Source: Ophelia neglecta
Lineage: Eukaryota
Reading direction: 5' to 3'
Assembly: GCA_965285935.1 (NCBI GenBank)
Contig: OZ260665.1
Coordinates: 5,704,001 to 5,768,000, forward strand
DNA length: 64,000 nt
Part shown: piece by piece, positions 7,006 through 50,857 of the stretch
How positions within the stretch are numbered: position 1 is the stretch's first letter
How the letters are laid out: each line of letters starts with the position of its first letter
The notes under the pieces: model-generated
The model's database searches: none
What the model was told of the DNA's origin: nothing
The model's input: only the letters and a program-made list of their open reading frames with translations
Translations under genes and position numbers: made by a program

Positions 7006-9369
7006 TGCGATCTGTATCCAAGTCAGAAGTGTTAAAACTAGAATAAAGTTTAAACAACTAGAATAAAGAGGTCACATGCATATGATATAGTCATTAACGT
7101 CCTTGATTGTAGTTTTAGGTAATTAATTGTTCATTATAAATGTCGTATGGACTACCAAACAGTATGGGAACGGTGAGAAGACATGTTCAAGATTTAAACA
7201 AATAACAATTTATCAGTCAAAATTACCAAAAATGAGTAATACATCATATGCACATACAATTACCAGTGCGAATAGATATAACACAAGTAGTCTTACTAAC
7301 TATGGCTGTTAGCTATTTTGCGTCAGTGTTTTACAATCTATGCCAACTCAAGAACCCATTATTTGCATTGCATTCAATGCATACGATAGTATGCCAGCGA
7401 CGCCATGATAATTGTCAGTTGATACAAATACAGCACGACTCATTGCATTTACAGAATACAAAGTGGTACAGCCCGATTCATATGCTGATGGGTAAGAGTT
7501 CGCTTGAATCTTAAAGAGGGTGGCAGTTTTTTTTACTGTAAACTGATACAATAATTACAATAAAGCTGCCATCATACACTTAAGAACCATACCACCGTGG
7601 ATAATATAAACAGGCAGTATATAACGGTTCACTTGTTCTATCTAAATTCAGAACAGGCTGGTGGTTACAATTTTCACAAATATCCTGAGCTCAAAAATTA
7701 TGCTAATTTTTGCAACGTTTTGACATCTACGCCTGAAAGATACGTAAAATGCCCATTTGCCGTTCATACTCTTCTGAATCCTTGGGTTAAGTCTGATGGT
7801 CAGTTTACATTCAAATTTCATTGACACAGGACTTGCACGTTTTCTAGATTGACAGATGGAATACCCTTTCTCTGTAGTGTGTGTTTTTAAGGCAAGGCAA
7901 TTGGGGGAGGTCTTACTGCCCTTAATCATCAGGATTTGGTCATATGTGACACAAAACACATATACCATTGTACAGTGTTCTGCCTTTGGCCAGGAATAGA
8001 CAAAACTGTAGCAAACGGTAATGTCTTCGTAAGTAGCCACATCTAAATGCTAGCCAAATAAGAAAGCCAGCTCTTATTAGACGACCGCAGGATGTATACC
8101 TGGCGCCTTTATCGTGAAGCATGATGATAAGTTTTAAACTAAATGATCACAGCTCATAAAACGCAGCGTACAAGTTGTATCCAGGTTGTTGTGTATTGAG
8201 CTGTATCAATCATGGTGTCGCTGGTTAGGGTTATATAAATGGCTGCTCCATTGAGATGACAGGCATATCTAATTCTTTGAGATGTTTCATTCGACAGGGC
8301 AACATGTGGAATGGTTACCATGCTATACAGTATAAAAAGGGACGGATAATGTAGGGGAGTGCATCACCCAAACTTGTAATAAATGGTACGCTGTATGGAC
8401 TACAGATACAGGTTGTTTAGAAGGGTCATTAGGTACCTCTGCCTTGACGTAATAGAGTTAATGTCATAACAAAAGGTTCTACAGTGATGGTGGAAATGAC
8501 AGAGAAAGCATTTGTTTTACATACTAGAAATAATGTACGCTTCAGTTTGCCCTACGGAGGTCAAAGGTCATTTATTGGTCTCTTGTAAAGGTCTACAGCA
8601 GCAGGGGGCCAGATACACAAGCCGACAACACGTGTTCGATTGCATGGATACAGGGATCCGACCAAACCTCACTCCGTCTAGATATTACCTAACCCCTCTT
8701 GTATGTCTAGTAACATTGGTAGATCGCCCGAGGTCGGCCTTATGATATCCAGGATAGTTATTTTTTTTCAAAGTTCAAAGTGTTTATTGCCATGGTGATA
8801 GACTAAGTACATTTTATATTACAGTAAATACAAACATAAGTGAAAAAAAGGCTGAGAGCAGGACAACAGAACGTTGTATATGCCATATCATAAGATTTCA
8901 CTTTAAACAATTTATGCGCAGTGTGAATAACAAGACACATTATACGCACACATACAAAACTATTCTCACACTTACATGTAAGTACTTGTAGTGATTAGAG
9001 TAAAGAAAGAAATAAAAAATATTATAATTGTTCTCTAGTCACTGTCGTGAAGTTTTATTGAAATCAAAAGACCCGATGTCTGTGTTTTTATCAGGCAAGA
9101 GTTCACGAGGTGTATGAATATGCCTTTATCATATACAATAGAATGGCTATGTATTACCTGTCTGATTCGTAAGGGCTGATGTGAATCTTAAAACGCACTC
9201 GTGCGTGCCTACGTGTATATGATGTGCTCCCCGTATCGTATGTTAGCTTTGGGTGTTTCCCAAGTTCAACTGATATGCTTATTTTCATGGATCCTTTTTT
9301 TTTGAATTATTCTCTATTTACACATCCTGCTTGTGGCTGAGGGACAACGTGATATAGGTTCTTATCAGA

Positions 9370-12040
9370 GGAGCGGGGGGTGGGGGGTGGGGGGTGGCCA
9401 GAGAGATTGTCAATGAGGAACGGGAGGTCAGGAGGGTGTTAGGGGGAGAGGAGTGGTCAGAGAGATTGTCAGTGAGGAACGGGTGGTCAGGGGGGGTGTT
9501 AGAGGGAGAGTGGTGGTCAGAGAGATTGTCAGTGAGGAACGGTTGGTCAGGGGGTTGTTAGAGGGAGCGGGGTGGTCAGAGAGTTTGTCAGTGAGGAACG
9601 GGTGGTCAGAGAGATTGTCAGTGAGGAACGGGTGGTCAGGGGGGTGTTAGAGGGAGCGGGGTGGTCAGAGAGTTTGTCAGTGAGGAACGGGTGGTCAGAG
9701 GGAGGGGGTGAGAGGGAGAGGGGTGGCCAGAGAGATTGTCAGTGAGGAACGGGTGGTCAGGGGGGTGTTAGAGGGAGAGGTGTGGTCATAGAGTTTGTCA
9801 GTGAGGAACGGTTGGTCAGGGGGTTGTTAGAGGGAGCGGGGTGGTCAGAGAGTTTGTCAGTGAGGAACGGGTGGTCAGAGAGATTGTCAGTGAGGAATGG
9901 GTGGTCAGGGGGTTGTTAGAGGGAGCGGGGTGGTCAGAGAGTTTGCAATGAGGAACGGGTGGTCAGGGGGGCGTGAGAGGGAGAGGTGTGGCCAGAGAGA
10001 TTGTCAGTGAGGAACGGGTGGTCAGGGGGGTGTTAGAGGGAGAGGTGTGGTCATAGAGTTTGTCAGTGAGGAACGGGTGGTCAGGGGGGTGTTAGAGGGA
10101 GCGGGGTGGTCAGAGAGATTGTCAGTGAGGAACGGGTGGTCAGGGGGGTGTTAGAGGGAGAGGTGTGGTCATAGAGTTTGTCAGTGAGGAACGGGTGGTC
10201 AGGGGGGTGTTAGAGGGAGAGGGGTGGTCAGAGAGTTTGTCAGTGAGGAACGGCGGGTCAGGGGGGTGTTAGAGGGAGAGGGGTGGTCAGAGAGTTTGTC
10301 AGTGAGGAACGGGTGGTCAGGGGGGTGTTAGAGGGAGAGGTGTGGTCATAGAGTTTGTCAGTGAGGAACGGGTGGTCAGGGGGGTGTTAGAGGGAGAGGG
10401 GTGGTCAGAGAGTTTGTCAGTGAGGAACGGCAGATCAGGGGGGTGTTAGAGGGAGAGGGGTGGTCAGAGAGATTGTCAGTGAGGAACGGGTGGTCAGGGG
10501 GGCGTGAGAGGGAGAGGTGTGGCCAGAGAGATTGTCAGTGAGGAACGGGTGGTCAGGGGGGTGTTAGAGGGAGAGGTGTGGCCAGAGAGTTTGTCAGTGA
10601 GGAACGGGTGGTCAGGGGGGTGTTAGAGGGAGAGGGGTGGTCAGAGAGTTTGTCAGTGAGGAACGGCGGGTCAGGGGGGTGTTAGAGGGAGAGGGGTGGT
10701 CAGAGAGATTGTCAGTGAGGAACGGGTGGTCAGGGGGGCGTGAGAGGGAGAGGTGTGGCCAGAGAGATTGTCAGTGAGGAACGGGTGGTCAGGGGGGTGT
10801 TAGAGGGAGAGGTGTGGCCAGAGAGTTTGTCAGTGAGGAACGGGTGGTCAGGGGGGTGTTAGAGGGAGAGGTGTCGCTAGAGAGATTGTCAGTGAGGAAC
10901 GGGTGGTCAGGGGGGGGGGGTGTTAGAGGGAGAGGGGTGGTCAGAGAGTTTGTTAGTGAGGAACGGGTGGTCAGGGGGGTGTTAGAGGGAGCGGGGTGGT
11001 CAGAGAGTTTGTCAGTGAGGAACGGGTGGTCAGGGGGGTGTTGGAGGGAGCGGGGTGGTCAGAGAGTTTGTCAGTGAGGAACGGGTGGTCAGGGGGGCGT
11101 GAGATGGAGAGGTGTGGCCAGAGAGATTGTCAGTGAGGAACGGGTGGTCAGGGGGCGTGAGAGGGAGAGAGGTGGTCAGAGAGTTTGTCAGTGAGGAACG
11201 GGTGGTCAGGGGGGTGTTAGAGGGAGAGGGGTGGTCAGAGAGATTGTCAGTGAGGAACGGGTGGTCAGGGGGGCGTGAGAGGGAGAGGTGTGGCCAGAGA
11301 GATTGTCAATGAGGAACGGGTGGTCGGGGGGGTGTTAGAGGGAGAGGTGTGGCCAGAGAGTTTGTCAGTGAGGAACGGGTGGTCAGGGGGTTGTTAGAGG
11401 GAGAGGGGTGGTCAGAGAGTTTGTCAGTGAGGAACGGGTGGTCAGAGAGATTGTCAGTGAGGAACGGGTGGTCATGGGGCGTGAGAGAGAGAGGGGTGGT
11501 CAGAGAGATGGAACGGGTGAGGAACGGTTGTTCAGGGGGTTGTTAGAAGGAGGGGGTGGTCAGAGAGTTTGTCAGTGAGGAACGGGTGGTCAGGGGGGCG
11601 TGAGAGGGAGAGGGGTGGTCAGCGAGATTGTCAGTGAGGAACGGGTGAGGAACGGTTGTTCAGGGGGGTGTTAGAAGGAGGGGGTGGTCAGAGAGTTTGT
11701 CAGTGAGGAACGGGTGGTCAGGGGGGCGTGAGAGGGAGAGGGGTGGTCAGCGAGATTGTCAGTGAGGAACGGGTGAGGAACGGTTGTTCAGGGGGGTGTT
11801 AGAGGGAGAGGGGTGGTCAGAGAGGTTGTCAGTGAGGAACGGATGGTCAGGGGGGTGTTAGAGGGAGAGGGGTGGTCAGAGAGGTTGTCAGTGAGGAACG
11901 GGTGGTCATGGGGCGTGAGAGGGAGAGGGGTGGTCAGAGAGATTATCAGTGAGGAACGGGTGGTCAGGGGGGCGTTAGAGGGAGAGTGGTGATCAGAGAG
12001 GTTGTCAGTTAGGAACGGGTGGTCAGGGGGGCGTGAGAGG
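9370..12040 (+). repeat. G-rich tandem satellite, about 59-bp unit built from two about 30-bp GGTGGTCAG-initiated subunits, about 45 copies
   Basis: Consensus about ggtggtcagagagtttgtcagtgaggaacgggtggtcaggggggtgttagagggagagg; the register shifts by 1 nt per 60-nt line at 10201-10440. Degenerate GGTGGTCAG-containing sequence continues to about 12370. Confidence 0.95.
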
Positions 12041-33509: not shown

Positions 33510-36500
33510 ATGTTTTGCACCCGGCTTACCTGGATTGCTTTGGGTTTGTGTTCCATGAGATCGGCACCTGCCATTGGACTACCTTTAAGAGGTTTGTTTA
33601 AGTGTGACACTACTAGTATATCTGATATCTTAGCCTCTTGTATGAAATATACGTGGTTCGTAATATTTCATTTACAAATTGCAACTTATTTATTTTAGTG
33701 ATAATTCCGAAAAAAAAGTGAATGTCATTGCAAATACTTTCATTGGTATAAGTATGGCAAAAAATTAAAACCAGCCCTACATATACACAATGATTAAATA
33801 AAGATATGCATATCGTGTAATTACCAGACGACGAATCGCAGTATATAAGCATAGACGATGACATCAGTGGAGCGAATGTCCCGGATCGGGAAGACAGAAA
33901 CTTCCCTCCCGACATCTTATTGAATATTACCTTCTCTGGGTACAACACAGTCAACCTCACTTTAAGGAGGAACCGTAAAATCAATGCGGACGTGCCTATC
34001 TATTTTATGGATTTGCCAGACGAGCCTCAGAAAGTGCCTGCAGTAAAGGTAAATTCCCAACAGTGTACACGCAGCTTCACCTTATCCACATCATGACCAC
34101 AATACAAAATATTGGAAAATAGTAGCAAAAAAAGAAGTTGGTATAGTTTCGTCCTCCTCAGTTGATTATGAACATTTTCATATCAGACTAGTTTCCCCAC
34201 AATTTTTTTAATTGTTTAAGAATGGAAAAGTTATAATAGCCACAATTGGAAAACTAATGACATGTTGTACCCTATTACTTATTATGTTACCCATATTGTG
34301 CATAATTATATATACAAGGATGGAGCAGACGAGACCTCCAGGCAAGGTTATAAACACAGTCTTCTACCAAAATAAAAACTACTTATAATATAATACTTCA
34401 GCAAATAAAATGTCGCTCTAGGATGTAGGGTTTTACCAGGATTCATCCAATGGTGCCGTATTCACTGCCAAACTATCTAAAGAAGATGGAAAAGTATATA
34501 GGAGATATGTAAGTTCACGTCGTCTGTCTTGACTTCGATAACTAATTACTAACATACTGTAGTGTGGATCCTAATGCACTCTGCTTTCACAGCAATTCAG
34601 TTAAGCCCTTCTGAATACAAATACTTTTACAATTCCTACCAATAATTAGGGTTATCTACAAATATGATATGCATTTCGGCGATAAATGTAACCTTTACTT
34701 ACCTAAACTGAATAATACCCATTAATCAATGCTTTGTCTCTAATGCCTAACATGTTTTGTTTCCATGGTAAAGTCACAGATTTCAACTGATTATATATTG
34801 ACCAATAAGGTTTATAAAAAATAAAAGCTCCTAACCGTACTGTCTCCTACAAATGGTGAAGTCGAACATCTCCGACAGTGCTGCGTAGTACGACCGTTAC
34901 TTGAGTATTAGATGAGTCCGTTTTATTACAGAATCTAACCAGGTCATTTCGAGGTTTATACTGCTTTGTGCGTAGTTCAAGCATACATTAGTGTAAATCA
35001 TCTCTTTCATACTGCAACATGCGGTTTTATAAACAATTTATAATACCGGCTGTTAACCAGGAAAATGAGGAAGTTACATTTATTCGCTATAGGCCTATAT
35101 GATACATTAAATATGTGATTATTAATTCACCAATACTGTGTGCTTGGCGATAATAATGAGTAGATTACCAGATTAACAAATACTGTGCTTTATATTGACT
35201 TTTCGCACGTCAGCGCAGGTATTTACGTACTCGGTTATGTGTTACAAAATAAGTTTACAATGTCAACTGATGGGCAGATGGTTATTTCCATGCCTGTTCA
35301 GACTTTGTTTAGTCAGATTTATGATTATGAGTTCTAATATTTAATATTTTAGGAGGGAATATTTACTCATACCAGTGGCCGGTACGAGTTGTTACCATTT
35401 AATCCTATCAAGGAGGATACCTCTAGTGCATTCAAGGCGAACAATAGTGTCAAAAGTGCTAAATCACACATATTCTACAGAGTGCGAAAGTTAAAAGAAA
35501 ACCTTAACACTGGTAAGTTTGCGTATATAATGGCTGAATACACCCGACAGTCCGGATCTTGCTTGGTTCAATCCTCTAAACCTATACTGTATTGAAATAA
35601 GTGTTTGCATTTTTAAAACTTGGTTTTGTAGTCGACACAATTTGTCTGAATTAACATACTTTTATCAGCCACAGGCAAATGCATACTCTGGTTTGTTAAT
35701 TTAAACTCATTTAGCTAATGGAGGGAACCAGTATAAATGAGTCAAAGACTAATTATAATATGAGTTAGTTTAGTATATAAGACACTCACTCTATACTATT
35801 TGTTATAACATTGATGTTCATTCACCTCAGATGGCAGGAATACAATCCATGCGAAGACGAATGGGTACAAGCAATATATAAGCGCAGACAAAGAGGAGCG
35901 CGAATATAGTTTTAAAAGAAGGCACAAAAGGGCTATTGGAGATTACAAGTACATACATGTGGAACTTGCTTTTGTTTTGGATTGCACAGAATGGGATTAG
36001 TGAGTATGCCACCCTGCTAGATTGTTACTAGTCCACAACTAGACTACAAGATGCTCTACTAGACTTTTACTAGCCCACTACTAGACTAAGAGACGCTAGG
36101 ACTATAACACTACCAAGTTCGTTAGTGTAAAACATTGTTTCTGTAATCGACGCATATAGCAATGGATATATTTCATCACTATAATTATTGTTTATATGCT
36201 GTTTTGCAGTTGGCTCGCAAAATCATCGAATAATGTTACCGAGGCCACGTTGATGCTGAAACTCTATTTTGCCTACCAAATGAACGGGGTAGGTGCTTGT
36301 TATATGGTAAAAGTACTCTGTCAATCCATAAAATACATGTAATTTCAGCTGATGTCTAGGCTTTGAGAACACGACGAAAGCTGTGGCCAAAGTAGCATTG
36401 GCACCTTGTTATCGGCATTTATTAACCTGATATTAAGCCTACGATAACCAAATTATACCCACTAAACAATACGGGTGAATGGGTTATAAAATGACTGATA

Positions 36501-39500: not shown

Positions 39501-42500
39501 ATATTTATTTGATCCCAAAAGTGGTGATATATTTTAAGATAAAAATCATATTAGTTTTGAATTGATGAACAACATGACTCTTACAAAGGTAACAGCAATT
39601 ATGTGGTAACATTTCATTCATAGTTTAACAACAGCATCGACTACGAAGAACTTTGTTTTAACCTTTGGTGCTATGTTCCGGGTGTGGGTTGCAGACAATC
39701 TGACAGCATTGTTCCCGCCGAAGGAACGGACTGCACGCCCTCTGGCGATGGCTCCAAGGTGAGCTATGATTATTTCGACACCCGTACACAACAAATGTGT
39801 TCTTCTAATGATGATTCAATACTAATATAATCCCTGCTAATATATTTACTTATATTGTGCTGACACGTCATTCTCTATCAGGATATGCTAGATCATGGCT
39901 TGTCCTAACCTGGCCATTGAAATTGATTGATGTCTGATTACTCCAGAGAGTGCAAGTAAATAAAGGAACATTAATTCATTACACCTTAATAAACCCATTT
40001 CCACATCAGCTCCACTGCATGACCGTATTTTGTGATATGCGGCGATTATTGCAATGTCGGGTCCTCCTATGCTAGTGCTGAACTCAACCGCTTCCTATGA
40101 ATCCGCAGATTTGAGCCTGGTTCCGCGCAAATAATGAAGTGCGTGTGCCCTAGTCTATTTCGCCTTCCATTAGCCGCCATCCCATGGGGCTAATTAACGG
40201 AGCAATATTTTAAGTTAATCGGGTGCTCCAACACGAACAGGCAGCTGGGAAGAAAAAATCTTGCCCGCAATTGCGGGCTAAAGCATCCAAAGCCAAACAT
40301 CGCGTTTGACCTTTTGCTAGCAGACAGCTATGTACCACCGTGTCTGTGAGAGGTTAATACCAAGATGAGACCATCCCAGTCAGCGGACAGTATGCATTCC
40401 TCCAAATGTAGTGGTTTAGAGTATCTAAACTTGATTTGTGTTGGCTAGAACACCATGTTAACAAGTAAAACAAAGAAAACGTTACCAGAAACCATGTATG
40501 ACTAAACATTGACTGTTAAAAGACTCCACCGTGGTAATCTGTTATAAAAGCGATTTGTTCTTGTTACGAGTAACTTAAGCTGGTGTTGTCTCTGTCTCGT
40601 ACTTTGAGGCCGGGGTTTTATTTTGTGCTTTTGGACCAATAGATGAACTGCATAGAAAATGTATCTGTTGTCACAGGTAATTGATTAGAAAATTAGTTGA
40701 ATGGATAGCCATTCCTAAAACCAATACTAATAATGCAATATTCGCTTTCAACAGGTTTGTTCGCGAGCACGGTGTATTGAAAAGCTGCTAACTCTCAACG
40801 GTAAGTAAAAAACACATTCATAATTTATTCTATCGGTTGAAATAGTAAGATCGGCGTATTTTTGCGACCCAGTTAATTAGTGGATAATTCTTTAAATGCG
40901 TAATGTAATAAAGTCAATAGTGTGTTTTTAAAATGTGGATAGTTGACATTGTTCCTCTACGAGAAAATGTAATCTTTTTGTATTAATTGCATGAGACGTA
41001 TTTTCGATTATCCCCGTTCAAACCAGTAGTACGGAGCAGTATATTTAGTCGTAATGTTTACTTTCTTATTGCAGATATCGAATCTTGTACGCCGACATCT
41101 ATCGGTCTGGAAGTACCCGATAGTACGTTATTTCGAACACAAAGTAGCCTAATACTACTTTCAATTCATTACTTATAGAATTAAACCATAATAAAGGAAG
41201 AATCGATGCGACAGTTTGTTGTGTATAGTGCTATAATTCGTTCTAATATTTGTTATTTGCAGGCTGTTTCGAATTAGACCCCGAGTTTGCACTCTCAGAT
41301 GGATCAAACACAACCTGTTCTGCTTATGTCAACAGTTATCCAAGATCTTGTAATTCAGACCCTGCGGTACAGAAGTATTGTTGCTTCTTTTGTAAAGCAT
41401 ATAACAACACTATTGGTAAGTACATTTTATTGCAGCTGACTATTCCTGTTGATTTTGGACTGCAATAATGATAACTAGCTACTCCGTTGCTACAATAATA
41501 CTTGTACAATAACTACATGTGAGGTCATTGTTCTTAGTATGCCCAGATGACTACGGCTTCACACTTTCACAACTTACATGTGAAGACATCACTGAGCAAC
41601 ATCCTTCACTTTGTCTGACCTTTCCCAGAGTCACTGAGTTTTGCTGCGCTGCTTGTCATCGTGCCGGACTGGTTTACATACAACCCAGTATGTACTGTTA
41701 CTTTTTTCTGAAACATACATGTTTTAACGCAACTTTGAACACATTTTGTTACCATATCATATTGGTTTATGTACAGAAATTGCCTTATTTCTAGCAGCAT
41801 CAGAATCGTCTACTGCAACAAACACAATTCCTGAAATCACTACGAGCACTACCGCTGCGGCATCCACTACAACTACCACGGATTATACATCCACTGCAAC
41901 TACTTCAGACGCTCCATCCCCTACAACTACCACAACTACTACACATACTCCATCTCCAACAACTTCAACTGGTCATCCATCTACTACAACTACTACTGTT
42001 GCTCCATCTCCCACTATTACCACTGTTGCTCCATCGCCCACAACTTCAACTGGTGATCCATCTGCTACAACTACTACTGTTGCTCCAACTCCCACAACTA
42101 CTATTGAGACTCCATCTACAACAACTACTACTAATTTTCAAACTACCAACACAACTTTTAATACTTCGTCAAGCACAACCACTGCGGTTTTTCAACCCAC
42201 AATAGTCACCACAACTGTGTCTTTGCCAATCACAAGCCAGAACACATTCGCGGATCCAACAAGCACTCCTACAAGGGTTCCCGAGATTAGCACCACCTTA
42301 CCGGAACCTGTGGGTAAGTTTGGCACAATTCGCATTTAGTGCGCTCCATTTATTTCAGAAATCATATGGACGTGAAGGTGTTCGTTTTTAACTCTGTCTC
42401 ACGGTGCCACTGTTGCCGCAGGCTGACTAAATGATTTCGCTACTAGCGGACATGAGCGGGGTTTATCAATTGCCATATTAATGGAGTTTTTTCGTCTTTT

Positions 42501-45500
42501 GAACCCTTCTACCTTTTATTTCTAGAAATCATTCATATTTTTACCTTTATAAGCAATCAAACATGCGTTTATATAAGACATGCGTATATATAATAAGCTA
42601 TCCGTAATCTCAACTGGTTACCTATAAATGAAACACAGGATATATCCTTAATCACGGCTGGTCACTTTTGATAACTGCCTATGGTAAAGAAAATCCTATT
42701 ATAGCAAGGGAAGGTCCAATGCTGGTAAAGAACTCATTAAAACCATTGACTATGACCTGTTAGTCAGATTCTAACCTGCCATTAATATCAAAATTCCATT
42801 AATATCAAAATTCCTTTTTACTAGTTCTATTTAAAATATCGTTAATTGTAGTCCATGTCGGTTTAATGTCATTTCTAAATTTGAGAAAACGAGAATCATT
42901 ATGTTGTCTTTCTTTTGCTAAAAATATATTTCGATTGAGGATTGTGTTGTAAGCACTAAGATCAGATTTCAGAGTTTTGTATATACAAACATAAAAACAT
43001 ACACATTGATTGTCTCTCACAAGTAGAGAGCGGCAAGTATAATATCCCGTATATCTTAGAGGTGACTGGAGTGTATCCGACCCACGGACCTGTATCAGGC
43101 GGAACAAGGGTGATGATCAGCGTAACTGGGCTCCGTCAGGACGATCTAGCAGCGGTCCGCATTGGACCGCAACAAGCTGACCAGCACAGCTGGTAGGTCT
43201 TTGATAGTAGAACCAGTCTTAGTATGGTACTAAGTGTAAAAGTTTACGTCAAGTCGGTTTTAATAAAGCAGACAAAGAGTGAAATATCGAGGTGACCTAT
43301 ATGCCAAACCGGTGCCTGGCTGGCTTCGTTTAGATCCATTATATTTCAAAGTACCACCGATATTTAACTAAGTTTCTTATACCTGTTAATCTTTTTTAAT
43401 TTCATCTTAAGGTTTAATTTCATCTTGTTCTTAGGATATCCGGAGCTATAATCATCATCACCTCATTCGTTCATGATACCAACGAACCACAAAACATCTC
43501 GTTATTGCTGACCGACGACTCCGTGATAGGTTCATCGTTTACCTTCACCTACAAACCTGACCCAGTGGTGACTAACATCTACCCCCTAAACACCATTCGC
43601 AGGTCTGTGAAAATCATGCTGCAATTTTACAAGTACACACGGCACAATCTATTATAGCGATTCAGAAACTCTAGCGCAGGCTGATAGGATGATGAACATT
43701 CTCTGCCTAAAACACGGCTCTTACGCAGGGAAGGGTAACGAAATACGTTTTTATCTTTATGGCACCTGGTTTCCGATTGGGCCTCTTCGGTTGTACCAGC
43801 ATTAAAAACAGTTTTCATAAGGTTAGAAATAAAGCAAACTATGAATTATTATTCATCGATGATGTTTCTTTGTCTGCCTGGTGTCCACTACTGTTTATTA
43901 AAGATATCTTGGTTTTGATACGTTTTTTATATTAATTAACCATGCTTCAACCATATAACCAGGGATATCCAAGTCCAAATAATGTAAACTTGCAGTATTT
44001 TATATAATTGTACCTCTGACAGGTTAGCTCTAATTGAGAATAGAGAATTCAGGTCTAAACGTTTAGAGGATATAATCCCAAAAAAGGCACGATCGCACCA
44101 TGTTAAACTGGCAATAACTAATATCTTACTTTGTTTAGGCCTTGTGCTGCTGTATGTACTTAAATATGTGGTTTTTAAATTTGACTGTTTAGGAATTGTT
44201 TCTTATTATAAATGTGAATTACACCTGGCGATTGATGTATATAGGCATAAAAACATAGTACACCTGTAGCATGCGTGAAAACCTACGATGAAGGGAGGTA
44301 ATTCAAACGTTGCTAAATGTGGCTTATATTTGCCTGTAGTGGTGGTACTAAGCTAAACGTCGAAGGACAGAACTTAGACTGTGTGATATATGTGCCTTAC
44401 ATTTTAACTGTAGTGGCGGTACCAAGCTGACAGTCGAGGGACGGTACTTAGACTCGGTGGCGGAGCCTGTATTACAACTCACTATCATCCCAGTAGGAAC
44501 TCCGGGGGCCAGAAGACGACGGGAAGCCCCGGAAGACGTCACTTTAACAAGTGTCAGTTTTACCTTCAATATATTAAGCATATAAAATTGTTGATTTTGT
44601 CTGAACCAGGGATCATTTCTGATGTTTGGATGCATTAGAATATTTTAATATTCAGTAAATCATTCACCCCTGAAGAGACCACTTGTCATGCGAGACCAAT
44701 AAATCTAGACTTAGGCATGGTCGCTGGTCAGAATATAATATACCAAATACAATATGCGTGATATTTTATCTACTGAAGGGTTTAACAGGAAAATGGGATA
44801 ACCATTTCAGGAATGTCTCAAGGAGACGGTAACTTTTAGTCGAATGACATGTCAGACTCCGAACACGACAGAATACATCAGTCAGAACCCTAACGAGGAG
44901 TACGACTTGTATATGGGCCTGGTGTTAGACGGAGTGCCCACGTATAGAAACCTGACGGCAGTACTACCACAATACGGAGAGCTTAACCTTCATTCAGACC
45001 CATCCTTCACAACATGGTCAGGCGTGAAAGTGATTGAACCAGGAAAGCATATCTCCGTAGAGGTGGGTGATGGTTTTTATTCTCTGGTCAAAATTACGAC
45101 CAACCCACATACCAATCATATCAATTTTAATTTGGTTCAATCATATCTATTTTCATAGTTTGGATTATACAAAAAGCCTAAGCCTTATCTATTGTATTTT
45201 CCAAAACGAAAAATACAAATAGACAAGCTTTTATTAGGATGAGGTGAGATTAGATGAATAGTTCGATACATATTTCAGTTCAGAATATAGATTTGCGTGT
45301 AGCACGTAGCACGCAAAGCACGTAACACATTATTTTGAATTTTGAAGCCGGTCGTTCCTTATGATTTCGGGCCGATTTAACGGACTGTTTTTGGTGGGTC
45401 CTTGACCTTGGTTGATGGATTTGCTTTGATTGCGTCATTTCAGCTCCCGTGTTCTGTTAGAATTGGCTTATATGCATGAACCATAGAAGGAAATATGTAT

Positions 45501-46961
45501 ACATCCTTGCTTGCATTATTCTTTATCTGGCGAGTTCTATTAAATAAAGGAACCCAAGATGGGGCGTTTCATAAGATCGCATTTGTTTATTCCTATGACA
45601 GACAAAGCTAAATAATGATCAAGAGTATACCATTAACTATGTCCAAAGTCATCAGGAACCAGCAGCCATACTACTAGCACCACATACATCAATAAATCAA
45701 TTCCTATCTCCCAAATAGTAAAAACATGTGATGAACCAAAGCATTCGAAAATGAACATTTGATATCACTAGCACTAAGAAGGTATACAAAATTGGAAAGT
45801 TTCCTTATGCAGGGTAACACTCTGGCGAAAGGATCTGGTATAGACGACTATACAGTTAAAATAGGAGAGGGTCGGTGTATGATGAAAGAACTACTGGACA
45901 ACGAGTTCCTGTGTCTCCCTCCTACCATACCGCCGCCACAAACCGCGGAGGACCAACTGTTAGGACCTAACGGCTACAACCTACTAGTACGCTGTCTATA
46001 TTTGAACTATGTATGAATTTGTTTTGGACCCGGATTCTGGAAGCATATTTAACTCATAACTTGGATTAAAATAAGTATAAAAGTGCTTAGTTTGCTGCTA
46101 TTCGATGTCCCTGGAAGCATAATTTGGTCCTAAACCTAGCCATTTGAGTCCTAAACTTAATCCTGGCCAATGCAAACAAATTCGGTGTCAGCTAAACGGT
46201 AGTAGCCTGATCTAATCACTAAAATTAAAACTGCTTCCAGAAACCGTCTGAATGTCCGATGAAATTAATGTATACTTATTGATTATTGATTATTGATTGA
46301 TTTCCAACCGCGTTTTTTCCCAGTGGCTGTCCTAGAGTAACAGATGAACTAATACTGATATTCAAATTGCATTACAGTTGAAAACAACAACTCGGTTTTT
46401 GTTAATTTATTTAATGTTCTTTTATTAAAGAATACAGCGAATTATTTCTTTACGTTTATGCGAGTTTTAGTTGACATGAATCATTATAACGCATAAGCTC
46501 TTCAGGATTATAATTTTTGTAAGCTCCACTTGTAGGTACGAGTTGGGTCCAGCGCTCTCAACCACGTGGGGCCGGTTCGCTATAAGCCCTCGAAGGAGTG
46601 GGATATATATGTAATAGCTGGATACTCGGTAACTGGGACGTCTGTCGTTATTGCCTTTATTATCGCATGCGTTTGGATTAGGGTCGGATGTAAAACCAGG
46701 AGAGAGATTACAAAACTAGAGGGCGACGACACATCGCCTGAAAGAACTAATCGTTATCACGATAACTTCAACCCCAATGATAGGGCAGTGGAATCACCTG
46801 GGTGGTCGTACGCGCCAAGGATAGTGGGACAGCAGCAAAGGGAGTGGGATTATCTGCCGCCTATAGACCAACGTGGCTACCATCGAGGATTCATTTTTCC
46901 ATATATAAACCCCTGGAAAACTCGCGGACCAAGTGTTGACAACGTTTATGAATACAACTGA
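33510..46961 (+). CDS. Membrane-anchored ADAMTS-like M12B metalloprotease fused to PLAC-like, mucin and plexin-type IPT domains (24 coding exons, about 1305 aa)
   Basis: Exons 33510-33591 (signal peptide MFCTRLTWIALGLCSMRSAPAIG), 33828-34048, 34422-34508, 35353-35512, 35831-35999 (RRHKR furin site), 36210-36288, 37020-37103, 37252-37415, 37536-37576, 37864-37969 (GLAWLGGVC...AAHELGH), 38589-38795 (NLGSKHD...YLMSP Met-turn), 39349-39490 and 39624-39758 and 40755-40800 (YSIDYQC...LWC...AEGTDC...C...C, ADAMTS Cys-rich), 41075-41122, 41263-41415 and 41538-41687 (C..C..C..CC..C), 41795-42313 (Thr-rich), 43027-43192, 43435-43602, 44414-44552, 44811-45062, 45813-45986 (IPT x3), 46536-46961 (TM and tail). 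Sum 3918 nt, frame open, all introns GT-AG except one GC-AG. Confidence 0.9.
42800..42980 (-). mobile_element. LINE ORF2 fragment (region between endonuclease and RT, CR1/L2-group-like)
   Basis: KTLKSDLSAYNTILNRNIFLAKERQHNDSRFLKFRNDIKPTWTTINDILNR resembles the Y.N.L...I..AK..Y....F.....D.K.TW..IN.IL motif of such elements. Confidence 0.55.
46031..46244. mobile_element. Probable MITE in intron 23
   Basis: Inverted termini ggattctggaagca ... tgcttccagaaacc. Confidence 0.45.
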
Positions 46962-47161: not shown

Positions 47162-49893
47162 AAACGCACACCATCATTGGTTCTAATGTTTATATCAATT
47201 TTTTATCCCAGTAGTACGGAATATTTGTTCCGAAAGGAATGAATTTACTGCAGCTTGCAATGAAATTTAAGACGATGCCGAAATGTATTTGAAACTTATA
47301 GATGTGTGATAGGATAAACAGACTATTTTCTTGTATCAGTTCATATGATTGTTTGCTTATTTTGGGTTTATAATATTATAACAATGCAATATGTTTATAC
47401 TTAACAATTTGTAATTCCTTACACACATATTGTCATTCACAGAAATTTCTCCACTGAACATCTTCCACGCCATATTTTCCCATCGGAATCTAGCCGATCA
47501 TACCATTTGACCAACTTCCGAGCCATACTCTCCCATTTGATCACCATGTGGTCAAATTATCTCCCCTCCCCCCCGCGAGTAACCCCAGTGCAGATAAGTT
47601 TAGTAAAGATTCATTATATTAACCTTCATATTCTTACATAGTTTATATAATCTTGTTTGAAGAAGACATATAAAAGTGTATATTTAATGACAATACGCCA
47701 CTGCTACTGGCACGAGTTCTAGCTGCCAGGAACTGTCTAACTAGGCCAAGTCTCTGACAAGACTACCTACTTTCATCTGGTGGTATATTCACAGGCCAAT
47801 ACGTGGAATTTAACTTTGGGATCCATCTTCTGAGTCAATTTGTGAAAATGTCTTTGGTACAAAAATATATCCTATAAACATACTGTGTCCACATTTAAAG
47901 TGTTTTGTTGCTCAAACGAAGGTTGTATTGAATGTACAATCCATTTTCTTATCATCGATGTATAGGCAAGGATATACATATATAGGTAGTGGTGGCGGGT
48001 TGTTAGACCCCTGTACATTCGTTGAATACAACAGTTCATTACCTGTTTGCATCGGCAATTCTGTTTATCTGGCATTAATACGATTAATAAAAATAATATA
48101 CCATAAGGCCATGGGGTCCATGTCAACAAGAAAAGATATCTCCATAAATATATAAATTTGGATGCCTACAATTATATCCTGAACCGACTTGACCGTTACA
48201 GTCCTGTCCACTATCTGTTTCGGCTTTATCTTCTATTACCTATGTGCTTACATGATTCATTCAAAAAGGACAGTAATAACTATTGTAATTTGTTCAGCAG
48301 AACGGATGGGAATAGGTGTAAGACAGTGTGAGAGGTAGGAGTTCAGGGTGTCTGGAAGTTTGTCTACGGCCTGATTTTGTATGGTCTGCGCAGAGTATTA
48401 TGACTAAATCTGGCAGTGGCTTCGCTTGGGACATGTTGCTATGTACAACAGTCGACAGTATAATAGGAGTGAGACGAATCTCAATGGCTGCCATGTGAGT
48501 TCCTGTGACCCAGATGGAATAACAGATAAATTGCAATAATGATTCCCCGTTTTATTGTCAACACAATAGCTATATAGTTCTTACAAACATTTCACTGGAA
48601 CGAAACTTAATCCAAGTGTCACCGAAATATCCCTAGGAAAGTAACATTCACCCACGTCTTGACTATCAAAAGAACTGCCTAAATCTGGTTTTGACAAAGA
48701 AAATCGCTCCCTTATATAGTGTGCCTATACCTCCCATTATACAGTCATGGTCCGACGCTCAGATGGACGCTGGGTGCCAAGCGAGCACTATCTTCACGGA
48801 GCTGCTCCGGTAGGAGTGAGAGCTATCGGTACAGTGAGGAGAGCTAGACTATGCCTGTTCAACTAATAGGCCTACCTAATGCAGGCTACAAGAGCAGTGA
48901 TAAAGTAAAATGCATGTGATGGGAGAAGTGCCCCCTCAAAACTGGGAATGGGAACTTTGTTTTAGGTAATGGGCCCATCACGAACAGTGGGCGCATCGCC
49001 AGGCTGAGGTTTTGGGGGGTTGGCATGTAAAGGAAGGAAGGGGGAGGTAAGCGTATGATCCATCCCCTGAGGAAGGGGACTGACAGAAAGTAGGCATGTA
49101 CAGTTATGGTGACCATTCATTCATGCAGTGATGATTCTAAGGCTAAAGGTCCGATCATTCTGGGAGAGAATATTAAGTATATTCCTAGTCTCAGGATCTC
49201 TAAATGTATGAGTAGGGCTGATTAAACGATTCAATCTCGTATTATACAGTAACAGGAATAAATATTCGATCTTATAAAAGATAGGACATTATTCCCATCC
49301 TCCTTTAATCATAGATATGCAAACTAAAAATCATTTTTTAATGCAAGCCAAACGATTATCTTGCAATTATTCAATTATTGTTTTGGGACAATCACACATA
49401 TGCTCTGACTGGCTGCCACAAAACTGTGACGTAGTAGTACTCTACGTTTCAGTATACACCAGCAACAACTATCTCCATAATTGGTTGAAATGACGTAGCT
49501 AAGGCTAATTTACGTCAAGCATTTACTAAGGTTGTGAGGAACTGCCCATAACTCGCTTTACTTTTCCAAGCATCGCAACAATTATCAACACATTTATTCC
49601 CTGTGTAGTTGATAACGGTCATACTCGGGCGGCCAATATTTGAACACTGACGAGGACGAGACTAAATATCCTCTTCCAATCACTGTTAGAGAGATAAATT
49701 AAACCAACAGCATTTCGACTGTATTTACAATCATTCATTAAAGAATATAATGGCCATCTTCGTAACAGAAGTTAGACCTATTTACCAATTTGCGCGAGGT
49801 GACTTCCGAACGCTGGAAATGTTTTACTTCTCGAGGTATCTAAAAATTGAATCAATCTTCAAATTAGCTAGTATCATACATCATAAATTTTAG

Positions 49894-50857
49894 AAGTGAC
49901 TAGAGTGTATCTTTCTTACGGGCCTGTATCAGGAGGAACGAGATTGGTTATCTGGTTGTGGCTTGGAGCCCGTCAACATTTAATAGCAGCGGACAAACTC
50001 CTCGGAAACAACAGCTACACTCTACGAGTAAGTTTCTACGATTACACAATCGCAGCATCACGCAAACCAGTTTGGTTCATCGACCTTACAATGGTTTTGT
50101 ATGACAATAAACACTGGTTGGGATATGCACCGCATAGGCCTTGGCATAATTATTGTCATTAGAACGGGAAGTGTGATTGTGTTTTTTTTTTTAATTTTCT
50201 TTGGGGGGGGGGGGGAGGGTGAAGGTCGGGCGGGGGGGGGGGTTGTAAAGTGTATGTAGAGGAGTAGGTGTGTGTGCGGGTGTGGAGGTAGGGGGGGGGG
50301 GTCGCTTTACTTTATCGGCAAGCGTGTTAGCTTATACGTTAGGAGACAAAAGACCATTTTCTTGAAAACGCTTAACAAAGGGGGCCCATAAAAAGTCATG
50401 GATTTATATAACTTAAATGGCATCGATCTTTGTTATCAAACTGATTAGTTTGTATACATGTGTACCTTTCAAATGGTACTTTTAAGGGGCTGGACATCCA
50501 CGCCTCTCCAGGTTTCATGGTTTGTCTCCATAGTATCCGTGGATATATTTAATGTTATTTTCAGGGTTTCCATACCTTTTTTGACTTGTATAATTGTACG
50601 TTATTATCAAGAACTTCCTCAAAATCCATATGGTTTATTATAAAAATTGTGTACTAACTTTTTGGCACCTTATATGGAGATTTAAAGTATTCTTAACCAC
50701 GATTCAGATGCAAGTAGGGGACAGTCCCGTCTACCAGATCGGGATAGTCCGATATGAGAAGGCGATGCAACCAAATGAATCTCTCATCCCCGGGTTGGCA
50801 GTCCTGTCAGTCGTATTTATCTTAACTGCCGTGACCGGTTTCCAGTATGCCAAATAA
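49894..50857 (+). pseudogene. Orphan paralogous IPT exon (49894-50027) and TM exon (50708-50857): a relic duplicate or alternative 3' exons
   Basis: tttag|AA GTG ACT...: VTRVYLSYGPVSGGTRLVI matches exon 19 VTGVYPTHGPVSGGTRVMI. ttcag|MQVGDSPVYQIGIVRYEK...LIPGLAVLSVVFILTAVTGFQYAK* matches exon 24 VRVGSSALNHVGPVRYKP plus TM. Splice sites are intact and the intermediate IPT exons are absent. Confidence 0.65.

What the first reader, a model, noticed from the sequence alone, without database searches (positions are those of the whole stretch)
33510..46961. Chimeric receptor-like protease: ADAMTS-type metalloprotease head on a plexin-type IPT stalk
Seen: one continuous spliced ORF joins an intact M12B catalytic domain (HELGHNLGSKHD, Met-turn) and an ADAMTS Cys-rich domain to two PLAC-like modules and an about 170-aa Thr-rich mucin spacer. 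These are followed by three IPT domains (P.HGPVSGGT; FTYKPDP...SGGTKLTVEG.YLD; LVLDGV...DP.F...VKIGEGRC...LCLPP...VRVG), a TM helix and a tail. Known: ADAMTS proteins are secreted and carry TSP1 repeats; ADAMs anchor through disintegrin/Cys-rich/EGF domains; this IPT series is the juxtamembrane stalk of plexins, which carry a Sema head and a GAP tail. Here there is no TSP1, Sema, PSI or GAP domain. I know of no described protein with this architecture. Inference: an independently evolved membrane-tethered protease or sheddase built by exon shuffling.
Basis: partly seen in the sequence, partly recalled or inferred. Interest (0 to 1): 0.9.

Follow-up and report, generated by a model that had tools for sequence, protein, structure and literature searches.

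The report
Membrane ADAMTS-like protease on plexin-type stalk
An invertebrate gene appears to encode a zinc protease of the normally secreted ADAMTS type, held on the cell surface by a sugar-coated spacer, three plexin-type IPT domains and a membrane anchor; the design was not found in the literature searched, but it is supported only by sequence comparison, not by transcripts.

Summary
I rebuilt the gene as 24 phase-consistent exons (33510-46961, + strand, 1294 aa, no internal stop). In order they encode:
- a signal peptide and a propeptide ending RRHKR;
- an M12B catalytic domain (HELGHNLGSKHD, Met-turn);
- an ADAMTS disintegrin-like domain;
- two six-Cys modules;
- a 174-aa Thr-rich mucin;
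- three IPT domains, one TM helix and a 93-aa tail.

Corrections:
- The conserved IPT1 acceptor is 43060, not 43027. Both are phase 1.
- Several small exons are needed.
- The exon 8 donor is GC.
- The PLAC HMM does not recognise the six-Cys modules.

No RNA data exist, so the single-gene reading rests on comparison within the genome. Seven genes share this head, and four carry the same mucin-IPT-TM exons on the same strand. Those four have a conserved G|GTAAG donor and phase-1 acceptor, and dN/dS is 0.13-0.33 throughout. An IPT-less paralogue has mucin, TM and the same tail motif in one exon, so the IPT exons lie inside the protease gene. The stalk is shared with SRCR-headed receptors, which this scan noted earlier on another piece of this genome. 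Exon shuffling is supported. Membrane tethering may predate the IPT insertion. Function is untested.

The parts
33510..33591 (+). Exon 1: ATG and signal peptide (MFCTRLTWIALGLCSMRSAPA...), donor phase 1
   Evidence: (conserved in paralogues B and D)
33828..34048 (+). Exon 2: propeptide
   Evidence: conserved in all 6 paralogues; splice sites conserved
34422..34508 (+). Exon 3: propeptide (DVGFYQD...), donor TAT|GTAAGT
35353..35512 (+). Exon 4: propeptide (EGIFTHTSGRYELLP...). Needed to restore the reading phase
   Evidence: tblastx conservation in all paralogues
35831..35999 (+). Exon 5: end of propeptide with furin-type site RRHKR|A (aa 214-218), then start of catalytic domain
36210..36288 (+). 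Exon 6: catalytic domain
37020..37103 (+). Exon 7: catalytic domain
37252..37415 (+). Exon 8: catalytic domain. The donor is GC (AAG|GCAGGT) where six paralogues have GT. An alternative in-frame GT donor follows 37421
37536..37576 (+). Exon 9: 41-nt catalytic exon (FDLVSDTGESSIT)
37864..37969 (+). Exon 10: catalytic domain, ...AAHELGH (first half of the zinc site)
   Evidence: Pfam Reprolysin_3/5/2/4, E 1.7e-4 to 3e-3
38589..38795 (+). Exon 11: NLGSKHD (third His), a 10-aa insert specific to this copy, and the Met-turn YLMSP
   Evidence: Pfam Reprolysin_2, E 5e-3
39349..39490 (+). Exon 12: first half of the ADAMTS disintegrin-like domain (4 Cys)
39624..39758 (+). Exon 13: ADAMTS disintegrin-like domain (CFNLWC...VPAEGTDC)
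   Evidence: Pfam ADAMTS_CR_2 in 7 of 7 paralogues, best E 1.4e-5; ADAMTS-5 is the top PDB hit, weak at E 0.23
40755..40800 (+). Exon 14: 46-nt exon (VCSRARCIEK...), end of the disintegrin-like domain
41075..41122 (+). Exon 15: 48-nt linker exon, phase 1-1
41263..41415 (+). Exon 16: six-Cys module 1 (C-x16-C-x10-C-x9-CC-x2-C), phase 1-1
   Evidence: not recognised as PLAC
41538..41687 (+). Exon 17: six-Cys module 2, a repeat of module 1, phase 1-1
   Evidence: not recognised as PLAC
41795..42313 (+). Exon 18: mucin spacer, 174 aa, 67% Thr/Ser/Pro. Ends at the conserved donor G|GTAAGT, phase 1
43060..43192 (+). Exon 19: start of IPT1 (VTGVYPTHGPVSGGT...). Conserved phase-1 acceptor
   Evidence: Pfam TIG, E 4e-5, above cut-off; plexin-A4 and Met in PDB; acceptor conserved in 4 paralogues
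43435..43602 (+). Exon 20: end of IPT1 (FTFTYKPDP) and first strand of IPT2
44414..44552 (+). Exon 21: IPT2 (GGTKLTVEGRYLD) and a loop with polybasic ARRRR|E (aa 998-1001)
   Evidence: plexin-A1 is the top PDB hit for the profile, E 0.056
44811..45062 (+). Exon 22: rest of IPT2 (two Cys) and start of IPT3
   Evidence: 31 paralogous exons in the genome; 29 of 30 nearest named Atlas clusters are TIG
45813..45986 (+). Exon 23: IPT3 core (VKIGEGRC...LCLPP)
   Evidence: profile hits plexin-A2 residues 1144-1176, E 6.4e-4
46536..46961 (+). Exon 24: last strand of IPT3 (VRVG...VRYK), TM helix (aa 1177-1201), 93-aa tail ending ...RGFIFPYINPWKTRG...YEYN, then the stop

Best explanation
Window 33510-46961 (+) holds one 24-exon gene for a 1294-aa type I membrane protein.

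Predicted protein, N to C:
- a signal peptide;
- a Cys-free propeptide ending in the furin-type site RRHKR;
- an ADAMTS-type M12B zinc protease domain with an intact HExxHxxGxxHD site and Met-turn;
- the ADAMTS disintegrin-like domain;
- two six-Cys modules;
- a 174-aa O-glycosylation-type mucin spacer;
- three plexin/Met-type IPT domains;
- one TM helix and a 93-aa non-enzymatic tail.

Inferred mechanism:
- The zymogen is activated by a proprotein convertase in the secretory pathway.
- The active protease is then displayed on a long rigid stalk at the cell surface, where it cuts pericellular matrix or surface proteins.
- A second polybasic site (ARRRR|E) in a loop of IPT2 could let a convertase split the stalk or release the head.

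Inferred origin:
- The stalk (exons 19-24) comes from a family of IPT-TM receptor genes in the same genome, most of which carry SRCR heads.
- It sits between the mucin exon and the TM/tail of an ADAMTS-like gene family.

Shown: the exon structure, the domain identities, the paralogue comparisons and purifying selection. Inferred: transcription as one mRNA, activation, surface display, catalysis and cleavage of the stalk.
For: 1. A complete model of 24 exons has no internal stop. All splice sites are AG/GT except one GC donor.
2. Domain hits, exon by exon:
   - Reprolysin on exons 10 and 11, and ADAMTS_CR_2 on exon 13.
   - TIG on exon 19.
   - Plexin and Met IPTs in PDB.
   - TIG clusters in the Atlas.
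3. The genome has seven genes with this head. Four of them have the mucin, IPT and TM exons 6-10 kb downstream on the same strand, with every exon open.
4. In all four, the mucin exon differs in length (about 150 to 640 aa) but ends at the same G|GTAAG phase-1 donor. IPT1 starts at the same phase-1 acceptor.
5. No conserved exon lies between them that could start a separate gene.
6. In other members of the stalk family, SRCR and Ser/Thr-rich exons lie directly upstream of IPT1. The stalk therefore normally has a head encoded upstream in the same gene.
7. IPT-less paralogue F has mucin, TM and tail in one exon. That exon aligns with the last exon of paralogue B from just after IPT3 to the end, including the RGYxFPYxxPW motif also present in this gene. 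The IPT exons are thus flanked on both sides by parts that belong to the protease gene family.
8. dN/dS is 0.13-0.33 in the propeptide, catalytic, disintegrin-like, six-Cys, IPT and TM/tail parts, with dS of 0.7-2.
9. There is a single strongly hydrophobic span, and two R-x-[KR]-R sites.
Against: - There is no transcript evidence. The only public runs that hold the stretch are genomic DNA of one sample.
- The exon 8 donor is GC in this copy, so this particular paralogue could splice poorly.
- Most exons give no Pfam hit on their own, and several PDB hits are weak.
- No relatives from other species could be found. The exhaustive protein search returned only four unrelated low-complexity hits.
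- The joined protein could not be searched or folded, so domain boundaries are estimates.
- Catalytic activity, convertase cleavage and surface location are all inferred.
- The head and stalk trees disagree, so the history includes loss or recombination that I cannot fully resolve.
Confidence: 0.65

Rival explanations
1. There are two adjacent genes: a secreted ADAMTS-like protease ending in the mucin exon, and a separate IPT-TM receptor gene. The pair was then duplicated as a block four times.
For: There is no RNA evidence for the exon 18 to 19 junction. Duplication of a two-gene block would also give four collinear copies. A phase match alone has a one-in-three chance.
Against: - In all four copies the mucin exon ends at a conserved strong donor, not at a conserved stop.
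- IPT1 has a conserved acceptor, and no conserved upstream exon carries a start codon or signal peptide.
- Other stalk-family genes have their heads spliced onto the same acceptor.
- The tail motif after the TM is shared with IPT-less paralogue F, where it lies in the same exon as the mucin.
Confidence: 0.1
2. The fused architecture is real for the family, but this copy is a decaying or poorly expressed paralogue.
For: - The exon 8 donor is GC where six paralogues have GT.
- This copy's head sits on the longest branch of the head tree.
- A 10-aa insert lies next to the active site.
- A decoy copy of the exon 21 acceptor lies 74 nt upstream.
- A relic stalk fragment lies just downstream.
- Family members do decay: E has a stop, and D has lost its zinc site.
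Against: - All 24 exons are open, and the zinc site, Met-turn, both furin-type sites and all Cys of the repeated modules are intact.
- dN/dS against every paralogue is 0.13-0.33.
- GC-AG introns are functional in animals (general knowledge), and an in-frame GT lies 6 nt downstream.
Confidence: 0.12
3. The protein is a surface receptor or adhesion molecule. The protease-like head serves mainly as a binding module and the tail signals, in line with the lectin/SRCR-headed members of the stalk family.
For:
- Paralogue D keeps the whole architecture under purifying selection although all zinc ligands and the propeptide furin site are gone.
- The tail carries a motif conserved across paralogues.
Against: This copy and paralogues B, C, E, F and H keep the complete HExxHxxGxxHD site and the Met-turn, and this copy keeps the propeptide cleavage site. 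That pattern is what an active enzyme would preserve.
Confidence: 0.13

Closest known systems
ADAMTS proteases, including the short C. elegans member MIG-17
   Same: Both have a signal peptide, a propeptide with a furin-type site, and an M12B catalytic domain with HExxHxxGxxHD and a Met-turn. Both are followed by the ADAMTS-specific disintegrin-like domain (Pfam ADAMTS_CR_2). From my own knowledge, MIG-17 lacks TSP1 repeats. It ends in a small Cys-rich PLAC module (PMC6215420).
   Different: ADAMTS enzymes are secreted and share a central TSP1 repeat, a Cys-rich domain and a spacer (PMC4349717). This gene has no TSP1 match, a mucin, three IPT domains, a TM helix and a cytoplasmic tail. Its six-Cys modules are not recognised by the PLAC HMM.
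ADAM membrane metalloproteases
   Same: Both are type I membrane proteins with a propeptide, an M12B catalytic domain outside the cell, one TM helix and a non-enzymatic tail. This is the closest functional analogue: a membrane-tethered protease or sheddase.
   Different: No disintegrin, ADAM Cys-rich or EGF match appears in the exons scanned. The domain after the catalytic domain is of the ADAMTS type. The stalk is mucin plus IPT. The propeptide has no Cys and therefore no Cys-switch.
Plexins and Met-family receptors
   Same: Both have a run of IPT domains next to the membrane. Exon 19 matches IPTs of plexin-A4, plexin-A1 and Met. The exon 23 profile matches the last IPT of plexin-A2. A polybasic site lies in the stalk; from my own knowledge, plexin-B and Met are cut by convertases.
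   Different: There is no Sema or PSI domain and no RasGAP or kinase domain. Plexins are Sema-PSI-IPT x3 followed by IPT x3, TM and RasGAP (PMC6374515).
SRCR- and lectin-headed IPT-stalk receptors of the same genome (about 27-31 genes)
   Same: Exons 19-24 are homologous, at 43-72% identity for exon 22, with the same exon structure and the same IPT1 acceptor.
   Different: Their tails lack the RGYxFPYxxPW motif.

Membership tests
ADAMTS | M12B catalytic domain with HExxHxxGxxHD and a Met-turn | tested here: met
   HELGHNLGSKHD at aa 393-404 and YLMSP. Pfam Reprolysin_2/3/4/5 hits on exons 10 and 11 are sub-threshold because each exon is a fragment of the domain.
ADAMTS | ADAMTS disintegrin-like domain directly after the catalytic domain | tested here: met
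   PF17771 ADAMTS_CR_2 matches exon 13 in 7 of 7 paralogues, best E 1.4e-5, covering half of the profile. ADAMTS-5 is the top PDB hit, but weak.
ADAMTS | Central thrombospondin type 1 repeat, Cys-rich domain and spacer | tested here: not met
   No TSP_1 or ADAMTS spacer hit in the exon stretches scanned. Between the disintegrin-like exon and the six-Cys modules, only two conserved micro-exons exist.
ADAMTS | Secreted, with no membrane anchor | tested here: not met
   One hydrophobic span at aa 1177-1201, followed by RVGCKTRRE and a 93-aa tail.
PLAC domain (PF08686) | Match to the PLAC profile | tested here: not met
   The Pfam scan of 13 modules gives no PLAC hit at E up to 10. The PLAC HMM run over the genome finds 8 canonical PLACs but none at these exons. 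Only the C...C...CC-x2-C spacing resembles PLAC.
ADAM | Disintegrin, ADAM Cys-rich and EGF domains between the catalytic domain and the TM | tested here: not met
   No such Pfam hits on the exons scanned.
ADAM | Type I membrane M12B protease with a cytoplasmic tail | tested here: met
   Signal peptide, TM and tail in the 24-exon model. This is an in-silico result only.
Plexin | Sema domain and PSI domains | tested here: not met
   No Sema or PSI hits on the exons scanned.
Plexin | Juxtamembrane IPT domains | tested here: met
   TIG on exon 19. Plexin-A4, -A1 and -A2 are the best PDB matches for exons 19, 21 and 23.
Plexin | Cytoplasmic RasGAP domain | tested here: not met
   The tail is 93 aa with no Pfam hit.
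IPT-stalk receptor family of this genome | Homologous exons for three IPT domains plus a last exon joining the IPT3 end to the TM, with a shared phase-1 IPT1 acceptor | tested here: met

The most novel reading that the evidence does not exclude
In this lineage the mucin-IPT-TM stalk is a general display-and-release cassette. Exon shuffling moves it between heads (lectin, SRCR, ADAMTS-like protease). The protease-headed members are tethered enzymes that a proprotein convertase can set free by cutting the polybasic loop of IPT2. The catalytically dead paralogue D, which lacks both convertase sites, acts as a non-cleaving receptor or decoy. If so, this is a natural family of membrane-anchored ADAMTS-type proteases with built-in release, a class not described for ADAMTS enzymes.
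Probability: 0.25. Interest if true: 0.65.

Novelty: new variant of a known kind. Interest (0 to 1): 0.5.

Why it matters
- ADAMTS-type proteases are described as secreted enzymes, and membrane tethering of M12B proteases is known from the ADAM branch. A membrane-anchored ADAMTS-like enzyme would show that the second branch reached the cell surface independently, through a different stalk.
- The family offers natural controls in one genome for testing what the stalk adds: members with IPT and without it, and members with an active site and with a dead one.
- It is a clear case of phase-1 exon shuffling, with one stalk cassette serving proteins whose heads are unrelated.
- The practical weight is limited. 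The organism is unidentified here, there is no expression evidence, and lineage-specific domain shuffling is common in invertebrate genomes.

Tried and rejected
- RNA evidence: the look-up of sequencing runs found no RNA run. The three runs laid are genomic contigs of one sample and say nothing about splicing.
- Relatives in other species: the exhaustive protein search with the catalytic exon gave four hits, all unrelated low-complexity or propeller proteins. I therefore did not spend search for homologous proteins on exon-sized queries. Its length filter would also have excluded full-length relatives.
- PDB searches gave nothing with single exons 11 and 22, nor with the profiles of exon 11 and exon 22.
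- Pfam found nothing on twelve further in-frame exon stretches.
- The open stretch 40194-40346, first taken for an exon, has no paralogue match and was dropped.
- The PLAC assignment was tested twice and not supported.
The heads of most stalk genes, and the region upstream of the headless copy at C8:5.147 Mb, could therefore not be read.
- The TM exons of paralogues E and H are only tentatively assigned, because their mutual similarity is not significant.
- Joined step left out: the spliced protein was never sent to a search or fold tool. It was joined only inside local scripts: this copy's model for reading frame, motifs and hydropathy, and exon-wise alignments of this gene, its paralogues and other stalk-family genes for dN/dS and the head and stalk trees. 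No whole-protein Pfam, structure prediction or fold search exists for this model.


Full report
**What is there**

The window is G000:C8:5704001-5768000 of a 762-Mb animal genome. On the + strand between 33510 and 46961 I first mapped open stretches. I then used conservation against six paralogues to place splice sites.

The result is a 24-exon model with a 3885-nt CDS and 1294 codons. It has no internal stop and consistent phases throughout. Every intron is GT-AG except the one after exon 8, which begins with GC.

The model needs six small exons that plain ORF reading does not show:
- 35353-35512
- 36210-36288
- 37020-37103
- 37536-37576
- 40755-40800
- 41075-41122

Without them the phases do not fit. 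Each is conserved in the paralogues.

All database work was done exon by exon, by reference. Joining was done only inside local scripts: this copy's model for frame, motifs and hydropathy, and exon-wise alignments of this gene, its paralogues and other stalk-family genes for dN/dS and the two trees.

**Domain content**

*Signal peptide and propeptide.* Exon 1 gives a signal-peptide-like N-terminus. Exons 2-5 give a propeptide without any Cys, so there is no Cys-switch. It ends in RRHKR|A.

*Catalytic domain.* Exons 5-11 form the M12B catalytic domain.
- HELGH lies at the end of exon 10, and N-LGSKHD follows across a phase-2 junction. Together they give HExxHxxGxxHD at aa 393-404.
- The Met-turn YLMSP follows.
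- Pfam gives Reprolysin_3/5/2/4 on exon 10 and Reprolysin_2 on exon 11.

*Disintegrin-like domain.* Exons 12-14 carry it. PF17771 ADAMTS_CR_2 matches exon 13 in all seven family members, with best E 1.4e-5. ADAMTS-5 is the top, though weak, PDB hit for the exon profile, through the motif C..LWC...PA.EGT.C.

- A Pfam scan of 13 such modules finds no PLAC.
- The PLAC HMM run over the whole genome finds eight canonical PLAC domains, none of them here.
- I therefore treat the label as unsupported.

*Mucin.* Exon 18 is 174 aa with 67% Thr/Ser/Pro.

*IPT domains.* Exons 19-24 give three IPT domains.
- Exon 19 hits Pfam TIG above its cut-off, and plexin-A4, plexin-A1 and Met IPTs in PDB.
- A family profile of exon 23 hits plexin-A2 residues 1144-1176, its membrane-proximal IPT, at E 6.4e-4.
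- The exon 21 profile has plexin-A1 as its top hit, matching the GGT.LT..G..L motif at the start of three successive IPTs (E 0.056).
- For exon 22, 29 of the 30 nearest named Atlas clusters are TIG families (a lead only).

*Anchor and tail.* One strongly hydrophobic span (aa 1177-1201) is followed by basic residues and a 93-aa tail with no Pfam match.

*What is absent.* No TSP1, Sema, PSI, RasGAP, kinase, disintegrin or EGF match was seen in any exon stretch scanned.

**Is it one gene?**

No RNA run holds the stretch. The three runs laid on 37300-43250 are genomic contigs of one sample. The case is therefore comparative.

1. The genome has exactly seven genes with this head. Their labels and places:
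   - A: this gene.
   - B: C8:5.775-5.790 Mb, + strand.
   - C: its 5' exons lie in the window at 5157-188 on the minus strand, and it runs off the window start.
   - D: C8:5.381-5.400 Mb, minus strand.
   - E: on C1.
   - F: C8:4.49 Mb.
   - H: C8:50.29 Mb.
   Copies A, B, C and D have the mucin, IPT and TM exons downstream on the same strand, all open.
2. In these four, the mucin exon differs widely in length (about 170, 150, 640 and 250 aa). It always ends at G|GTAAG in phase 1, and a stop follows within 7-25 codons if read through. IPT1 always begins at ...tag|(A/T)(G/A)GTGAC... in phase 1. In paralogue D a stop codon two codons upstream excludes any earlier acceptor.
3. Nothing between 42314 and 43038 is conserved among the paralogues. 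There is thus no candidate first exon for a separate IPT gene.
4. In other members of the stalk family, the exons directly upstream of IPT1 encode SRCR domains and a Ser/Thr-rich linker. The stalk is therefore normally spliced to a head.
5. Paralogue F has no IPT exons. Instead, a single exon after the second six-Cys module encodes mucin, a TM helix and a tail. This exon aligns with the last exon of B from just after the IPT3 end, through the TM, to the C-terminal motif RGYxFPYxxPW (E 2e-11). That motif is also in A, C and D but not in the SRCR-headed genes. In A-D, the IPT exons therefore lie between two parts that belong to the protease gene family.
6. dN/dS between A and each paralogue is 0.13-0.33 in every part, with dS 0.7-2. 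These are old duplicates, and both halves are under purifying selection.

I put the single-gene reading at about 0.8.

**History**

The head tree groups B, C, D and F with 100% support. A sits on a long branch, and E and H are outside.

On the stalk tree, A, D and a headless copy at C8:5.147 Mb group together, and B and C pair (100% support). All of these are separated from the SRCR-type stalks by a split with 99% support.

The TM of B and C resembles that of F. The TM of A and D resembles the stalk-family TM.

The simplest reading has three steps:
- one acquisition of the IPT cassette;
- loss of the IPT exons in F by a deletion that fused the mucin exon to the last exon;
- later exchange of stalk segments among cluster members.

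Repeated acquisition is not excluded, because neither tree is rooted.

E and H each have a mucin exon followed by an ORF with a TM-like stretch. E's has a good phase-1 acceptor. Their mutual similarity is not significant, so 'membrane anchoring predates the IPT stalk' is likely but not shown.

**Mechanism (inferred)**

The intact zinc site, the Met-turn and the furin-type propeptide site argue for an enzyme activated in the secretory pathway and displayed at the cell surface on a mucin plus IPT stalk.

A second polybasic site lies in a variable loop of IPT2. It reads ARRRR|E here, SRKRR|Q in B and C, and ARKRR|Q in one stalk gene at C8:14.37 Mb that, judging by the SRCR-like exon upstream of its IPT1, has no protease head. 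It is absent in D and in most others. It could allow convertase cleavage of the stalk, as is known for plexin-B and Met (my own knowledge).

Paralogue D has QSVAF...LGSRRD in place of HELGH...LGSxHD, and KTMSKRP in place of the furin site. It keeps the whole architecture, so it is a pseudoprotease.

**Comparison with known families**

The head is of ADAMTS type. The protein fails the ADAMTS definition, however, on the TSP1 repeat, the Cys-rich and spacer region, and secretion (PMC4349717).

It works like an ADAM but has none of the ADAM ancillary domains.

It shares only the IPT stalk with plexins, whose canonical architecture is given in PMC6374515.

Text searches found no natural membrane-anchored ADAMTS; the one hit was an engineered ADAMTS13. 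None of the listed top hits of a search on reprolysin, TIG domain, IPT domain and plexin held 'reprolysin', and the ADAMTS/IPT/TIG search listed nothing relevant. I could not query InterPro architectures.

My reading of the SRCR exons agrees with it.

**Verdict**

The exon-shuffling interpretation is largely supported, but tethering is probably older than the IPT insertion. The gene is one of a small family rather than a unique chimera. I class it as a new variant of a known kind, of moderate interest, awaiting transcript and activity data.

Noticed in passing
window 38877-39277: A stretch of about 401 bp in intron 11 has a depth of 10^4-10^5 in the DNA runs. Contigs of all three runs skip it (joint 38876 to 39278). 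It is a high-copy repeat insertion that is present in the assembly but absent from the run contigs, so it is probably an insertion polymorphism.
   Followed up: partly
window 44321-44396: The 5' part of exon 21, including its acceptor (ctgtag|TGGTGGTAC...; peptide SGGTKLNVEGQNLD), is duplicated in tandem 74 nt upstream of the real exon start. A second copy also matches in paralogue D. It may be a decoy or alternative acceptor, and reading through it meets a stop.
   Followed up: partly
window 49887-50854: A relic partial stalk lies 3 kb downstream of the gene. An IPT1-like start (ILEVTRVYLSYGPVSGGTRL) is fused to an exon-23-like end (LLGNNSYTLRV). An exon-24-like piece (MQVGDSPVYQIGIVRYE plus a TM) follows, with the tail cut to four residues.
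   Followed up: partly
window 5157-188, minus strand: The 5' exons (propeptide and catalytic start) of paralogue C lie here, head to head with this gene about 28 kb away. The rest of paralogue C lies beyond the window start, down to C8:5691132.
   Followed up: yes
L008:9841-9960 (-) and L008:8279-8473 (-) (paralogue D, C8:5.39 Mb): An IPT-bearing paralogue has lost its active site: QSVAF...LGSRRD replaces HELGH...LGSxHD. It also has no furin site in the propeptide and no polybasic site in the stalk. All its exons are still open and dN/dS is about 0.25, so it is a pseudoprotease.
   Followed up: partly
L018:3853-4410 (+) (paralogue F, C8:4.50 Mb): This head paralogue has no IPT exons. One exon encodes mucin, a TM helix and a short tail with the RGYRFPYVGPW motif. 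It probably arose by deletion from a B/C-like gene. About 1.3 kb further downstream lies a tandem array with ORF copies starting every 49 nt.
   Followed up: partly
L012:3090-3239 (+) (paralogue E, C1:30.417 Mb): There is an in-frame stop inside six-Cys module 1 of paralogue E (SSC*SD). This is either a pseudogene or a sequence error.
   Followed up: no
L024 and L037 (C8:5146688-5149572, minus strand): This is the stalk copy closest to the present gene (71% identity in exon 22). No M12B or six-Cys exon was found near it in the genome searches, and there is a TGA inside its tail. Only a short Thr/Pro-rich exon lies upstream of its IPT1. It is a partial duplicate or a gene with another head.
   Followed up: partly
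window 8001-12000: GC content rises to 0.45-0.60 with a GC skew of up to +0.73, far from the window mean of about 0.39. This is probably a G-rich repeat array.
   Followed up: no
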